DNA from: Octopus sinensis
Taxonomy: Eukaryota
NCBI RefSeq assembly: GCF_006345805.1
Contig: NC_043006.1
Span: forward strand, 102,734,001-102,798,000
Direction: 5' to 3'
Length of the DNA stretch: 64,000 nucleotides
Under the pieces are notes generated by a model that had not been told where the DNA came from, did no database searches, and worked only from the letters and a program-made list of their open reading frames with translations. Positions 55,411 through 62,414 of the stretch are shown here, piece by piece. Numbering within the stretch: position 1 is the first letter of the stretch; each line of letters opens with the position of its first letter. Both the position numbers and the translations under genes were made by a program.

Positions 55411-58400
55411 CATCACAATCAAGGAACGGCCATAATAGGCCATTCACCCACTAGAAATAACAGCCAAAGCTTCAACCGCAAAATAACATTAATTCCGTAA
55501 CCAGGAGAAAATTAAAAAACATTTACCCTGTAATTTCTTATACGATGCACCGTTTCATCTACTGTTTAATGGTAAACTAACCTGATTAAATTAAATCAAG
55601 CCAATCTTCCATAGGCCCTAGAATCGTCAGTAAGAAATAGCCAGATCGGAACAGATATTTTCACGAGGCATTTCTGTCCCTGCCTCGGCAATATCTGACC
55701 TAAAATTTTCAAATCATCGCACTCGCGCCAAATTTATCGGCAGCAAATAATATAAGCCGCCGATTCCATTACGGAACTAACCAGAAAATTCATAATTAAT
55801 CAATATAGGGTGGCAAAAAATTTTGTAGAATTTTTTTGCCACCAGCGGCCTAGTGGGAAAAAATTAAATAGTCATAGACAATTTTTAAGTTCAACATCAC
55901 AATCAAGGAACGGCCATAATAGGCCATTCACCCACTAGAAATAACAGCCAAAGCTTCAACCGCAAAATAACATTAATTCCGTAAACCAGGAGAAAATTAA
56001 AAAACATTTACCCTGTAATTCTTATACGATGCACCGTTTCATCTACTGTTTAATGGTAAACTAACCTGATTAAATTAATCAAGCCAATCTTCCATAGACC
56101 CTTAGAATCGTCAGTAAGAAATAGCCAGATCGGAACAGATATTTTCACGAGGCATTTCTGTCCCTGCCTCGGCATATCTGACCTAAAATTTTCAAATCAT
56201 CGCACTCGCGCCAAATTTATCGGCAGCAAATAAATATAAGCCGCCGATTCCATTACGGAACTAACCAGAAAATTCATAATTAATCAATATAGGGTGGCAA
56301 AAAATTTTGTAGAATTTTTTTGCCACCAGCGGCCTAGTGGGAAAAAATAAATAGTCATAGACAATTTTTAAGTTCAACATCACAATCAAGGAACGGCCAT
56401 AATAGGCCATTCACCACTAGAAATAACAGCCAAAGCTTCAACCGCAAAATAACATTAATTCCGTAACCAGGAGAAAATTAAAAAACATTTACCTGTAATT
56501 TCTTATACGATGCACCGTTTCATCTACTGTTTAATGGTAAACTAACCTGATTAAATTAAATCAAGCCAATCTTCCATAGGCCCTTAGAATCGTCAGTAAG
56601 AAATAGCCAGATCGGAACAGATATTTTCACGAGGCATTTCTGTCCCTGCCTCGGCAATATCTGACCTAAATTTTCAAATCATCGCACTCGCGCCAAATTT
56701 ATCGGCAGCAAATAAATATAAGCCGCCGATTCCATTACGGAATTAACCAGAAAATTCATAATTAATCAATATAGGGTGGCAAAAAATTTTGTAGAATTTT
56801 TTTGCCACCAGCGGCCTAGTGGGAAAAAATAAATAGTCATAGACCATTTTTAAGTTCAACATCACAATCAAGGAACGGCCATAATAGGCCATTCACCCAC
56901 TAGAAAAACAGCCAAAGCTTCAACCGCAAAATAACATTAATTCCGTAAACCAGGAGAAAATTAAAAAACATTTACCCTGTAATTTCTTATACGATGCACC
57001 GTTTCATCTACTGTTTAATGGTAAACTAACCTGATTAAATTAAATCAAGCCAATCTTCCATAGGCCCTTAGAATCGTCAGTAAGAATAGCCAGATCGGAA
57101 CAGATATTTTCACGAGGCATTCTGTCCCTGCCTCGGCAATATCTGACCTAAAATTTTCAAATCATCGCACTCGCGCCAAATTTATCGGCAGCAAATAAAT
57201 ATAAGCCGCCGATTCCATTACGGAATTAACCAGAAAATTCATAATTAATCAATATAGGGTGCCAAAAAATTTTGTAGAATTTTTTTGGCACCAGCGGCCT
57301 AGTGGGAAAAAATTAAATAGTCATAGACCATTTTTAAGTTCAACATCACAATCAAGGAACGGCCATAATAGGCCATTCACCACTAGAAATAACAGCCAAA
57401 GCTTCAACCGCAAAATAACATTAATTCCGTAAACCAGAGAAAATTAAAAAACATTTACCCTGTATTTCTTATACGATGCACCGTTTCATCTACTGTTTAA
57501 TGGTAAACTAACCTGATTAAATTAAATCAAGCCAATCTTCCATAGGCCCTTAGAATCGTCAGTAAGAAATAGCCAGATCGGAACAGATATTTTCACGAGG
57601 CATTTCTGTCCCTGCCTCGGCAATATCTGACCTAAAATCTTCAAATCATCGCACTCGCGCCAAATTTATCGGCAGCAAATAAATATAAGCCGCCGATTCC
57701 ATTACGGAATTAACCAGAAAATTCATAATTAATCAATATAGGGTGGCAAAAAATTTTGTAGAATTTTTTTGCCACCAGCGGCCTAGTGGGAAAAAATTAA
57801 ATAGTCATAGACCATTTTTAAGTTCAACATCACAATCAAGGAACGGCCATAATAGGCCATTCATCCACTAGAAATAACAGCCAAAGCTTCAACCGCAAAA
57901 TAACATTAATTCGTAAACCAGGAGAAAATTAAAAAACATTTACCCTGTAATTTCTTACACGATGCACCGTTTCATCTACTGTTTAATGGTAAACTAACCT
58001 GATTAATTAAATCAAGCCAATCTTCCATAGGCCCTTAGAATCGTCAGTAAGAAATAGCCAGATCGGAACAGATATTTTCACGAGGCATTCTGTCCCTGCC
58101 TCGGCAATATCTGACCTAAAATTTTCAAATCATCGCACTCGCGCCAAATTTATCGGCAGCAAATAAATATAAGCCGCCGATTCCATTACGGAATTAACCA
58201 GAAAATTCATAATAATCAATATAGGGTGGCAAAAAATTTTGTAGAATTTTTTGGCACCAGCGGCCTAGTGGGAAAAAATTAAATAGTCATAGACCATTTT
58301 TAAGTTCAACATCACAATCAAGGAACGGCCATAATAGGCCATTCACCCACTAGAAATAACAGCCAAAGCTTCAACCGCAAAATAACATTAATTCCGTAAA

Positions 58401-61400: not shown

Positions 61401-62414
61401 TAAATCAAGCCAATCTTCCATAGGCCCTTAGAATCGTCAGTAAGAAATAGCCAGATCGGAACAGATTTTCACGAGGCATTTCTGTCCCCTGCTCGGCATA
61501 TCTGACCTAAAATTTTCAAATCATCGCACTCGCGCCAAATTTATCGGCAGCAAATAAATATAAGCCGCCGATTCCATTACGGAATTAACTAGAAAATTCA
61601 TAATTAATCAATATAGGTGGCAAAAAATTTTGTAAATTTTTTTGCCACCAGCAGCCTAGTGGGAAAAAATTAAATAGTCATAGACCATTTTTAAGTTCAA
61701 CATCACAATCAAGGAACAGCCTAAAAGGCCATTCACCCACTAGAAATAACAGCCAAAGCTTCCAATCACCCGCAAAATAACATTAATTCCGTACCAGAGA
61801 AAATTAAAAAACATTTACCCTGTAATTTCTTATACGATGCAACCGTCATCTCTACTGTTTAATGGTAAACTAACCTGATTAAATTAATCAAGCCAATCTT
61901 CCATAGGCCCTTAGAATCGTCAGTAAGAAATTGCCAGATCGAAACAGATATTTTCACGAGGCATTTCTGTCCCTGCCTCGGCAATATCTGACCTAAAATT
62001 TTCAAATCATCGCACTCGCCGCCAATTTTATCGGCAGCAAATAATATAAGCCCCGATTCCATTACGGAATTAACCAAGAAAATTCATAATTAATCAATAT
62101 AGGGTGGCAAAAAACTTTGTAGAATTTTTTTGCCACCAGCGGCCTAGTGGGAAAAAATTAAATAGTCATAGACCATTTTTGTTTAAGTTCAACATCACAA
62201 TCAAGGAACGGCCATAATAGGCCATTCACCCACTAGAAATAACAGCCAAAGCTTCAACCGCAAAATAACATTAATTCCGTTAAAAACCAGGAGAAAATTA
62301 AAAAACAATTACCCTGTAATTTCTTATACGATGCACCGTTTCATCTACTGTTTAATGGTAAACTAACCTGATTAAATTAAATCAAGCCAATCTTCCATAG
62401 GCCCTTAGAATCGT
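55411..62414. repeat. Tandem array of ~485-bp units (14 complete plus one 222-bp partial)
   Basis: CATCACAATCAAGG unit starts at 55411, 55895, 56378, 56860, 57344, 57828, 58310, 58797, 59282, 59771, 60253, 60736, 61223, 61701 and 62193. Differences are mostly single-base indels. Confidence 0.98.
55533..55638 (-). ncRNA. Type I hammerhead ribozyme motif with long stem II insert (first copy; one per array unit)
   Basis: Minus strand: ATTTCTTA-CTGACGA-[67-68 nt]-GAA-ACGG TGCA TCGT-A-TAAGAAAT, i.e. 8-bp stem I, intact core, 4-bp stem III with palindromic loop, GUA triplet. Confidence 0.8.

What the first reader, a model, noticed from the sequence alone, without database searches (positions are those of the whole stretch)
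55411..62414. 7-kb satellite whose ~485-bp unit carries a hammerhead ribozyme: candidate retrozyme / circular-RNA array
Seen: on the minus strand every unit reads ATTTCTTA-CTGACGA-(68 nt)-GAAACGGTGCATCGT-A-TAAGAAAT. This places all conserved hammerhead core nucleotides (C3-A9, G12-A14, A15.1-U16.1, H17=A) between a perfect 8-bp stem I and a 4-bp stem III with a self-complementary TGCA loop. By my reading about 11 of 14 complete units keep both core halves; unit 6 has H17=G and units 9 and 14 are garbled. Known: tandem satellites with one type I HHR per unit exist (newt satellite 2, schistosome Sm-alpha, cave-cricket pDo500), and metazoan non-LTR retrozymes self-cleave to monomers that circularise; palindromic loop III is typical of HHRs acting as dimers. 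Inference: a minus-strand transcript would be cut every ~485 nt into monomers, possibly circRNA, and the array may be a non-autonomous retroelement family. I cannot check whether it has been described in this lineage.
Basis: partly seen in the sequence, partly recalled or inferred. Interest (0 to 1): 0.95.

Follow-up and report, generated by a model that had tools for sequence, protein, structure and literature searches.

The report
Octopus satellite repeat carrying hammerhead ribozyme
A 7-kb tandem repeat in the Octopus sinensis genome carries, in each 484-bp unit, a motif that fits a self-cutting hammerhead ribozyme; it looks like an undescribed octopus member of a known class of ribozyme-bearing repeats (animal retrozymes), but cutting has not been tested.

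Summary
Window 55407-62414 is a 484-bp tandem array of 14.5 copies. On the minus strand each unit reads ATTTCTTA-CTGACGA-(68 nt)-GAAACGGTGCATCGT-A-TAAGAAAT. Eleven of 14 complete units fit a type I hammerhead (HHR) descriptor that gave only one comparable hit in 67 Mb of random sequence.

The window is Octopus sinensis chromosome CM016868.1. Units differ mostly by homopolymer indels that look like long-read errors, so no covariation test is possible.

Three atypical features:
- Helix II is 68 nt long.
- A U.U mismatch closes helix II.
- The monomer prefers an inactive fold that sequesters the core.

In a two-copy transcript, however, the unconstrained minimum-energy fold is a double hammerhead, with a 12-bp helix III and both cores free. 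This is the mechanism shown for newt and axolotl satellites.

Rfam finds no hammerhead here. A control showed that Rfam's HHR models also score consensus-like motifs below threshold, so this negative is weak.

No relatives, transcripts or cleavage data could be obtained.

A second, compact HHR-like motif lies in a foldback 500 bp to the right of the array.

Verdict: probably a real retrozyme-like HHR satellite, a new member of a known kind with a variant helix II. Interest is moderate, not 0.95.

The parts
55407..62414 (-). Tandem array of a 484-bp unit: 14 complete units plus one unit truncated at the 5' end inside the HHR core. GC is about 37%. The HHR-sense strand is the minus strand.
   Evidence: TRF. 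blastn of the consensus gave 94.9-99.4% identity for every unit. Unit lengths are 480-491 bp.
55533..55638 (-). Representative hammerhead domain (unit 1).
- Stem I 5' strand: 55638-55631
- Core C3-A9 (CTGACGA): 55630-55624
- Helix II: 55623-55557
- G12-A14: 55556-55554
- Helix III plus TGCA loop: 55553-55542
- H17 = A: 55541
- Stem I 3' strand: 55540-55533
The predicted cut lies between 55541 and 55540.
   Evidence: Sequence, descriptor hit, folds.
56498..56604 (-). Hammerhead domain of unit 3, with an intact 8-bp stem I.

Equivalent domains with an intact 8-bp (or 9-bp) stem I start at 57570, 58539, 59024, 59997, 60481 and 60961.

Domains with stem I shortened to 5-6 bp start at 56122, 57088 and 61448.
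57941..58055 (-). Unit 6 hammerhead domain with G at position 17 (GTG instead of GTA). It is predicted to be uncleavable if the base call is right.
59400..59515 (-). Unit 9 hammerhead domain. The 3' half reads AGATAACGGTGGCATGTCGTA, so the GAAA box and helix III are disrupted by indels.
61820..61931 (-). Unit 14 hammerhead domain. The 3' half reads GAGATGACGGTTGCATCGTA, so the GAAA box is lost.
56506..56989 (-). One predicted monomer RNA, from cleavage site to cleavage site (484 nt). It is branched and about 60% paired.
   Evidence: MFE -147.7 kcal/mol, z = -6.1 against dinucleotide shuffles. There are 17 G.U pairs, against 2 on the opposite strand.
62415..62562 (+). Inverted partial unit (consensus positions 281-428, 99% identity), joined head-to-head to the 5' end of the array.
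   Evidence: blastn of the consensus; sequence.

Best explanation
The array is a retrozyme-like satellite of Octopus sinensis. Each 484-bp unit encodes, on the minus strand, a type I hammerhead ribozyme.

Proposed mechanism (all steps inferred from the fold predictions and from how known relatives work):
1. The array is transcribed as a multimeric minus-strand RNA.
2. Neighbouring ribozyme copies pair through their self-complementary helix III segment (ACGGUGCAUCGU). This forms a 12-bp helix and two composite active sites, a 'double hammerhead'.
3. The RNA is cut 3' of GUA every 484 nt.
4. The released monomer refolds so that core residues A6-U10.1 pair with the 3' strand of helix III. This switches the ribozyme off.
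5. By analogy with coral, mussel and axolotl retrozymes, the monomer would then be circularised by an RtcB-type tRNA ligase. It may be copied back into DNA by a retroelement reverse transcriptase, generating tandem arrays.

What is shown here: the sequence motif, its improbability by chance, and the monomer and dimer fold predictions. What is inferred: transcription, cleavage, circularisation and mobility.
For: - **Core and helices.** All invariant core positions are in the correct order for type I, flanked by an 8-bp Watson-Crick stem I and a 4-bp stem III with C15.2-G16.2.
- **Chance.** The descriptor passes in 11 of 14 units and gave 0 hits with stem I >=6 bp in 67 Mb of random sequence.
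- **Dimer fold.** An 847-nt transcript with two copies has the double hammerhead as its unconstrained MFE (-253.4 kcal/mol). Helix III forms in trans over 12 bp, both stems I and II form, and all 14 core C3-A9 nucleotides are unpaired. Two isolated helix III segments dimerise at -19.5 kcal/mol.
- **Monomer fold.** The catalytic fold (-25.8) loses to an inactive fold (-29.3), and P(helix III) is below 1%. The literature reports poor monomer and efficient dimer cleavage for newt and axolotl HHRs.
- **Published precedents.** Animal type I HHRs lie in 150-450-bp low-GC tandem repeats, including mussel repeats of 350-390 bp. The axolotl HHR_Amex2 has the same U.U mismatch at the base of helix II and cleaves better as a dimer (PMC7229834). 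The dimeric mechanism is reviewed in PMC6155905.
- **Structured monomer.** z = -6.1, with 17 G.U pairs on the HHR strand against 2 on the other. Helix II contains 5 G.U pairs in its 14-bp upper stem, so it exists only in this polarity.
- **A second motif nearby.** An unrelated compact HHR-like motif lies 500 bp from the array.
- **Lineage.** The giant squid genome paper (PMC6962438) lists 235 Rfam Hammerhead_1 matches, and octopus genomes carry families of Naiad-clade Penelope-like elements, reported as old remnants in cephalopods (PMC8557442).
Against: - No Rfam hammerhead model matches at gathering score, nor at E<=10 even on a 121-nt slice. This is weakened by the control: phage-contig motifs with consensus stem II score only 23-35 bits, all below gathering.
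- Positions 10.1/11.1 are U.U instead of the usual G-C.
- Helix II (68 nt, about 22 bp) has no described counterpart among retrozyme HHRs in the papers read, so the usual loop 1-loop 2 contact cannot form as known.
- There is no covariation support, because units differ only by error-like indels.
- No related sequence was found in any searchable collection.
- Both strands are more structured than their own shuffles (z = -6.1 and -5.7), so overall stability is not strand-specific evidence.
- There are no data on transcription or cleavage.
- The unit (484 bp) is above the reported 150-450 bp range.
Confidence: 0.6

Rival explanations
1. It is an ordinary satellite DNA whose unit happens to contain, or has kept as a dead relic, a hammerhead-like motif. 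The RNA, if made at all, does not self-cleave, and the array grew by unequal crossing-over only.
For: - No Rfam hit at any threshold.
- A U.U mismatch at 10.1/11.1, an over-long helix II without a canonical loop-loop contact, and a monomer fold that is inactive.
- No covariation.
- The HHR region is no less variable than the rest of the unit: 33 variants in 107 nt against 90 in 380 nt.
- The HHR review warns that descriptor searches give many false positives (PMC6155905).
- A 2.7-Gb genome is expected to contain a few such motifs by chance.
Against: - The chance of the full motif in one 484-bp unit is about 1e-6.
- The palindromic helix III that makes the double hammerhead the MFE of a dimer is an extra, specific feature not required by the descriptor.
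- A second independent HHR-like motif lies within 1 kb.
- The U.U mismatch has an active precedent in axolotl HHR_Amex2 (PMC7229834).
Confidence: 0.3
2. The repeat is not an independent retrozyme. It is an amplified terminal (pseudo-LTR) portion of a Penelope-like element (PLE), and the tandem plus inverted arrangement is the footprint of a PLE insertion.
For: - An inverted, truncated copy is joined head-to-head to the upstream end of the array (62415-62562).
- The downstream end runs into a (TA)n microsatellite.
- PLE insertions are described as partial tandems with an adjacent inverted 5'-truncated copy and a bias for microsatellites (PMC8557442).
- Xenopus retrozymes are related to PLE pLTRs (preprint 10.64898/2026.07.22.740005).
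Against: - No PLE reverse transcriptase or GIY-YIG piece was seen in the window. The ORF fragments give DDE_1 and Tc3-HTH matches in Pfam or look LINE-like by eye.
- PLE hammerheads are minimal variants lacking helix III, whereas this one has a 4-bp helix III.
- This genome is so rich in microsatellites that adjacency to one means little.
- The inverted junction could be a rearrangement or a long-read assembly artefact.
Confidence: 0.1
3. It is an assembly artefact: the array, or the motif within it, is mis-assembled or mis-called in a long-read-only assembly.
For: Error-like homopolymer indels are frequent (55 of 70 indel cells), and there is an odd inverted junction at 62414/62415.
Against: The motif is in the majority consensus of 14 units and is identical in 8 of them. 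Random errors degrade a motif rather than create one.
Confidence: 0.03

Closest known systems
Animal non-LTR retrozymes (Cervera & de la Pena 2020, PMC7229834), e.g. Mytilus galloprovincialis 350-390-bp repeats and Acropora 220-240-bp repeats
   Same: - Head-to-tail repeats of a few hundred bp with low GC.
- No ORF, LTR, PBS or PPT.
- One type I hammerhead per unit.
- The monomer is predicted to be highly self-paired.
- The host is a mollusc.
   Different: - The unit is longer (484 bp, against the 150-450 bp reported).
- Helix II is 68 nt instead of a short hairpin.
- Most invertebrate HHRs are reported to cleave efficiently as monomers, whereas this one is predicted to need a dimer.
- Expression and circularity are not shown here.
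Newt satellite 2 and axolotl retrozymes (HHR_Amex1 and HHR_Amex2)
   Same: - Type I HHR in a 330-350-bp satellite.
- Palindromic loop III and a weak monomeric fold.
- Efficient action only as a double hammerhead.
- HHR_Amex2 shares the U.U mismatch at the base of helix II.
   Different: - Those have a 1-2-bp helix III and a short helix II with conserved loop 1-loop 2 contacts.
- Here helix III has 4 bp and helix II is a long imperfect rod.
- No sequence similarity outside the core is expected, and none was tested.
Rfam Hammerhead_1 (RF00163)
   Same: - Same order of elements.
- Same N7 = C (CUGAcGA).
- Same ACG...CGU helix III as the model consensus shown.
   Different: - The model expects GUCC/GGAC in helix II and C at position 17.
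- The octopus motif gets no reportable score.
Minimal hammerheads of Penelope-like elements
   Same: - Type I topology.
- They act as dimers.
- They are associated with tandem and inverted insertions.
   Different: - PLE hammerheads essentially lack helix III and sit in the pseudo-LTRs of an RT-encoding element.
- No PLE coding sequence was seen in this window.

Membership tests
Hammerhead ribozyme (type I) | Invariant core: C3 U4 G5 A6 N7 G8 A9, G12 A13 A14, A15.1-U16.1, and H17 not G | tested here: met
   Met in the consensus and in 11 of 14 units. One unit has G17 and two have a disrupted GAAA box.
Hammerhead ribozyme (type I) | Three helices around the core, with helix I open-ended | tested here: met
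   - Helix I has 8 bp.
- Helix III has 4 bp plus a UGCA loop.
- Helix II has 4 + 4 + 14 bp.
- The closing 10.1/11.1 pair is U.U rather than G-C.
Hammerhead ribozyme (type I) | Match to the curated covariance models (Rfam RF00163 and its clan) | tested here: not met
   No hit at gathering score or at E<=10. In the control, consensus-like phage motifs also stay below gathering at 23-35 bits, so the test has low power.
Hammerhead ribozyme (type I) | Helices supported by compensatory changes among relatives | tested here: inconclusive
   Units are about 99% identical and differ by error-like indels. No relatives could be retrieved.
Hammerhead ribozyme (type I) | Loop 1-loop 2 tertiary contact typical of natural type I HHRs | not testable with these tools
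   Helix II has no short loop 2. An internal loop 4 bp from the core could substitute for it, but this is speculation.
Hammerhead ribozyme (type I) | Site-specific self-cleavage | not testable with these tools
   Needs in vitro transcription of monomeric and dimeric constructs.
Animal non-LTR retrozyme | Tandem repeat with complete type I HHRs in at least two consecutive units and HHR MFE below -5 kcal/mol (criteria of 10.64898/2026.07.22.740005) | tested here: met
   TRF array. Runs of up to 5 consecutive intact units. HHR fold of -25.8 to -29.3 kcal/mol.
Animal non-LTR retrozyme | Unit of 150-450 bp, GC below 50%, no LTR/PBS/PPT, non-coding | tested here: met
   GC is 37%. The longest ORFs in the consensus are 47-60 codons, and a 60-aa ORF query found nothing. 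The unit of 484 bp lies slightly above the published range.
Animal non-LTR retrozyme | Expressed as linear and circular monomer RNA | not testable with these tools
   No transcriptome could be searched by nucleotide sequence.
Animal non-LTR retrozyme | Dispersed copies with target-site duplications; co-occurrence with PLEs | tested here: inconclusive
   - Only one array lies in the window.
- The flanks are a microsatellite and an inverted copy, so no TSD can be read.
- Naiad-clade PLE families, described as old remnants in cephalopods, are reported for Octopus spp. in PMC8557442.
- None was seen in the window.

The most novel reading that the evidence does not exclude
The octopus repeat defines a structurally new subclass of type I hammerhead:
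- Helix II is extended into a 22-bp rod, and an internal loop takes over the role of loop 2.
- Helix II is closed by U.U.
- It is an obligate double hammerhead.

Such a subclass escapes Rfam and possibly also descriptor searches that expect a short helix II. It would drive production of a 484-nt circular RNA, the largest animal non-LTR retrozyme. Together with the neighbouring compact hammerhead foldback, this would mark an unrecognised reservoir of ribozyme-bearing retroelements in cephalopod genomes.
Probability: 0.3. Interest if true: 0.6.

Novelty: new member of a known kind. Interest (0 to 1): 0.45.

Why it matters
If active, this would extend ribozyme-made circular RNAs (retrozymes) to cephalopods. 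I found no paper describing them in that lineage.

It would also give a natural hammerhead with an unusually long helix II that switches between an inactive monomer fold and an active dimer fold.

On the practical side, Rfam's hammerhead models did not report this motif. Descriptors limited to a short helix II may miss it as well, so counts of animal hammerheads may be underestimates.

It would not change the general picture, which has been established since the newt satellite (1987) and the 2020 retrozyme work.

Tried and rejected
- **Rfam at gathering score and at E<=10.** I scanned the whole window, the array, and 76- and 121-nt slices. No hammerhead was reported. A positive control on phage contigs carrying CTGATGAGTCC..GGACGAAAC gave only sub-threshold scores, so I treat the negative as weak evidence rather than a refutation.\n- **Searching for relatives.**\n - A 60-aa ORF from the satellite found nothing in the 5.8-billion protein set.\n - An exact 40-aa ORF look-up found nothing.\n - One gapped and one 18-mer DNA pattern in JGI metagenomes gave nothing, or four chance matches without HHR context.\n - GTDB genomes and IMG/VR gave nothing.\n - The available collections do not allow a nucleotide search of octopus genomes or transcriptomes.\n- **Strand asymmetry.** I first thought the HHR strand alone was unusually structured. 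That was an artefact of comparing the antisense strand with shuffles of the sense composition. With each strand's own dinucleotide shuffles both are structured, at z = -6.1 and -5.7. Only the G.U count (17 against 2) remains as a weak strand-specific signal, and it is confounded by G+U-rich composition.\n- **Selection within the array.** Variation is not lower in the HHR than elsewhere in the unit. The test is uninformative because the variation is error-like.\n- **A motif at about 50689 (minus strand).** TTTCTTCCTGAGGAG..GACGAAAC lies inside a Tigger transposase fragment and has no helices, so I rejected it as chance.\n- **An autonomous partner.** I looked for a PLE reverse transcriptase or GIY-YIG domain in the window and found none.
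Full report
**1. Observation**

Tandem Repeats Finder reports a single array at 55407..62414 with period 484, 14.5 copies and 96% matches. On the minus strand every complete unit contains CTGACGA preceded by ATTTCTTA. This is exact in 12 of 14 units; two units read TATTCTTA.

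After 68 nt (67 in unit 1), 11 units have GAAACGGTGCATCGT-A-TAAGAAAT.
- Unit 6 has G at position 17.
- Units 9 and 14 have a disrupted 3' half.

A fifteenth, 5'-truncated copy begins at 62414 inside the core.

**2. Where the sequence comes from**

The window is eukaryotic. GC is about 36%, it is crowded with microsatellites, and it holds transposon fragments.

A 132-aa ORF at 21367-21765 is 100% identical to Octopus sinensis LOC118765212. The 20,566-bp locus fetched around that gene is 100% identical to window 11367-31932.

The window is therefore GCA_006345805.1 chromosome CM016868.1, with record coordinate = window coordinate + 102,734,000.

Differences between units are mainly 1-nt indels in homopolymers (55 of 70 indel cells). 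The 'substitutions' are clustered pseudo-substitutions. This is what uncorrected long-read errors look like. The true units are probably almost identical, so the array gives no covariation information.

**3. Is it more than chance?**

I wrote a type I descriptor with these requirements:
- stem I adjacent to CUGANGA;
- helix II of 8-100 nt with a closing stem, allowing one mismatch at its base;
- GAA;
- an A...U-closed helix III of at least 3 bp;
- H17 not G;
- the 3' strand of stem I.

It picks 11 of the 14 units. In 67 Mb of first-order Markov sequence modelled on this window it gave 6, 3, 1 and 0 hits with stem I of 3, 4, 5 and 6 or more bp.

That is roughly 1e-9 per nt for an 8-bp stem I, or about 1e-6 for one 484-bp unit on both strands. 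A 2.7-Gb genome would still contain a few isolated chance motifs, so the satellite context matters for the argument.

**4. Anatomy and folding**

The core is C3-U-G-A-C-G-A9, G12-A-A14, A15.1...U16.1, A17.
- Stem I has 8 Watson-Crick pairs.
- Helix III is ACGG/UCGU with a UGCA loop.
- Helix II is atypical. A U.U mismatch sits at 10.1/11.1. It is followed by 4 bp, a 7x7 internal loop, 4 bp, a 1x1 loop, and a 14-bp stem with five G.U pairs and a hexaloop.

As an isolated 107-nt domain, the catalytic fold (-25.8 kcal/mol) loses to a fold (-29.3) in which A6-U10.1 pair with the 3' strand of helix III. The probability of helix III in the ensemble is below 1%.

The 12-nt helix III segment is self-complementary, and two copies dimerise at -19.5 kcal/mol.

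In an 847-nt transcript containing two neighbouring copies, the unconstrained minimum-energy structure is the double hammerhead:
- a 12-bp helix III between the copies;
- each stem I formed between the 5' strand of one copy and the 3' strand of the other;
- both helices II formed;
- both CUGACGA cores unpaired.

This is the arrangement shown experimentally for newt satellite 2, and for axolotl retrozymes that cleave poorly as monomers and well as dimers (PMC6155905; PMC7229834). Axolotl HHR_Amex2 also has the U.U mismatch at the base of helix II.

The 484-nt monomer is strongly structured (-147.7 kcal/mol, z = -6.1). The opposite strand is also more structured than its own shuffles (z = -5.7), so my earlier impression of strand-specific stability was wrong. 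The HHR strand does use 17 G.U pairs against 2 on the other strand. This is consistent with structure maintained at the RNA level, but it is confounded by composition.

**5. Rfam**

No hammerhead family matches at gathering score or at E<=10, even when only 121 nt are searched.

As a control I fetched phage contigs carrying CTGATGAGTCC-N(4-12)-GGACGAAAC. None reached gathering. With the E-value threshold they scored 35 bits on Hammerhead_3 (gathering 48.5) and 23-24 bits on Hammerhead_1 (gathering 34).

The type I model is short (45 positions) and expects GUCC/GGAC in helix II. A motif with a different, 68-nt helix II must therefore fall below any reportable score. The Rfam test is formally not met, but it carries little weight.

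**6. Surroundings**

The downstream end of the array, in HHR sense, runs into a (TA)n microsatellite at 55336-55407.

The upstream end is joined head-to-head to an inverted 148-bp piece of the unit (62415-62562, 99% identical).

Further right lies a foldback with 223-nt arms that are 99% complementary (62732-62954 and 63066-63288). Each arm carries a compact motif: AGGCTTG-CTGATGA-ATAC AGAG GTAT-GAAA-TCA CAG TGAT-A-CAAGTCT. It has all hammerhead core positions, a 7-bp stem I, a 4-bp helix II and a 4-bp helix III. It is unrelated in sequence to the satellite ribozyme. A looser descriptor gives 1 hit per 5 Mb of random sequence.

Two independent hammerhead-like motifs within 1 kb argue that this is a spot where ribozyme-bearing elements have inserted. 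Tandem plus inverted truncated copies and a microsatellite preference are described for Penelope-like elements (PMC8557442). Even so, no PLE coding sequence was seen in the window, and an assembly artefact cannot be excluded.

**7. Comparison with what is known**

Type I hammerheads in tandem repeats of 150-450 bp, with GC below 50% and no LTR, PBS or PPT, are known as animal non-LTR retrozymes. [quoted passage not shown] A 2026 preprint relates vertebrate retrozymes to PLE pseudo-LTRs and gives operational criteria: a TRF repeat, a type I HHR in at least 2 consecutive units, and HHR MFE below -5 kcal/mol. This array meets those criteria.

Full-text searches found no paper on hammerhead satellites or retrozymes in octopus or other cephalopods. 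The only related item is a count of 235 Rfam Hammerhead_1 hits in the giant squid genome (PMC6962438).

**8. Verdict**

The motif is real and very unlikely to be chance. It is most probably a hammerhead of the satellite or retrozyme kind that works as a double hammerhead.

It is a new member of a known kind. Its variant features are a long helix II, the U.U mismatch and the 484-nt unit. Activity, transcription, circularisation and mobility remain to be shown.

No relatives could be retrieved with the collections at hand.

Interest is moderate at 0.45.

Noticed in passing
window 62732-63288 (arms 62732-62954 and 63066-63288); motifs at 63089-63136 (+) and 62931-62884 (-): A foldback with 223-nt arms (99% complementary, 111-nt spacer), flanked by TA repeats. 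Each arm carries a compact hammerhead-like motif: CTGATGA, 4-bp helix II, GAAA, 4-bp helix III, A17 and a 7-bp stem I. It is unrelated in sequence to the satellite ribozyme. Rfam does not report it. As a perfect foldback, the two arms would pair with each other in a read-through transcript.
   Followed up: partly
window 62415-62562 (+): An inverted 148-bp piece of the satellite unit (consensus 281-428, 99% identity) joined head-to-head to the truncated 5' end of the array. It could be a PLE-like insertion footprint, a rearrangement or an assembly artefact.
   Followed up: partly
window 62567-62586 and 62958-62977: A 20-nt exact inverted match (CTTTTACGAATTGCATTTCG) lies between the sequence just after the inverted satellite piece and the start of the foldback spacer. 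This hints that the two belong to one composite element.
   Followed up: no
whole window: The window is Octopus sinensis GCA_006345805.1 CM016868.1, positions 102,734,001-102,798,000 (100% identity over the 20.5 kb that could be compared). The array lies about 3.1 Mb from the end of the 105.9-Mb record.
   Followed up: yes
window 21367-21765 (-): The annotated protein LOC118765212 (156 aa, no Pfam domain) lies among what look like LINE remnants; by eye, a fragment at 20251-20469 resembles an AP-endonuclease. It is probably a transposon ORF1-like fragment rather than a host gene.
   Followed up: partly
window 49929-50867 (-), 35852-36226 (+), 53247-53480 (+): Decayed DNA-transposon fragments:
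- Tigger/pogo DDE_1, 81% identical to an O. sinensis tigger-like protein.
- A Tc1/Tc3 HTH.
- A fragment that looks by eye like a hAT dimerisation domain (no Pfam match).

No host gene is evident anywhere in the 64 kb.
   Followed up: partly
window 54508-55056 and throughout: An (ATG)n run of about 184 copies lies just left of the array. The microsatellite load across the window is extreme: (TA)n, (CA)n, (ATAC)n. These runs give spurious miRNA-family matches in Rfam, e.g. mir-297 at 55333-55401.
   Followed up: no
L067 (IMGVR_UViG_3300041956_000313) 1892-6179: A viral contig fetched as an Rfam control carries five hammerhead-consensus motifs. Three of them are spaced about 480-500 nt apart, and all score below Rfam gathering thresholds.
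   Followed up: no
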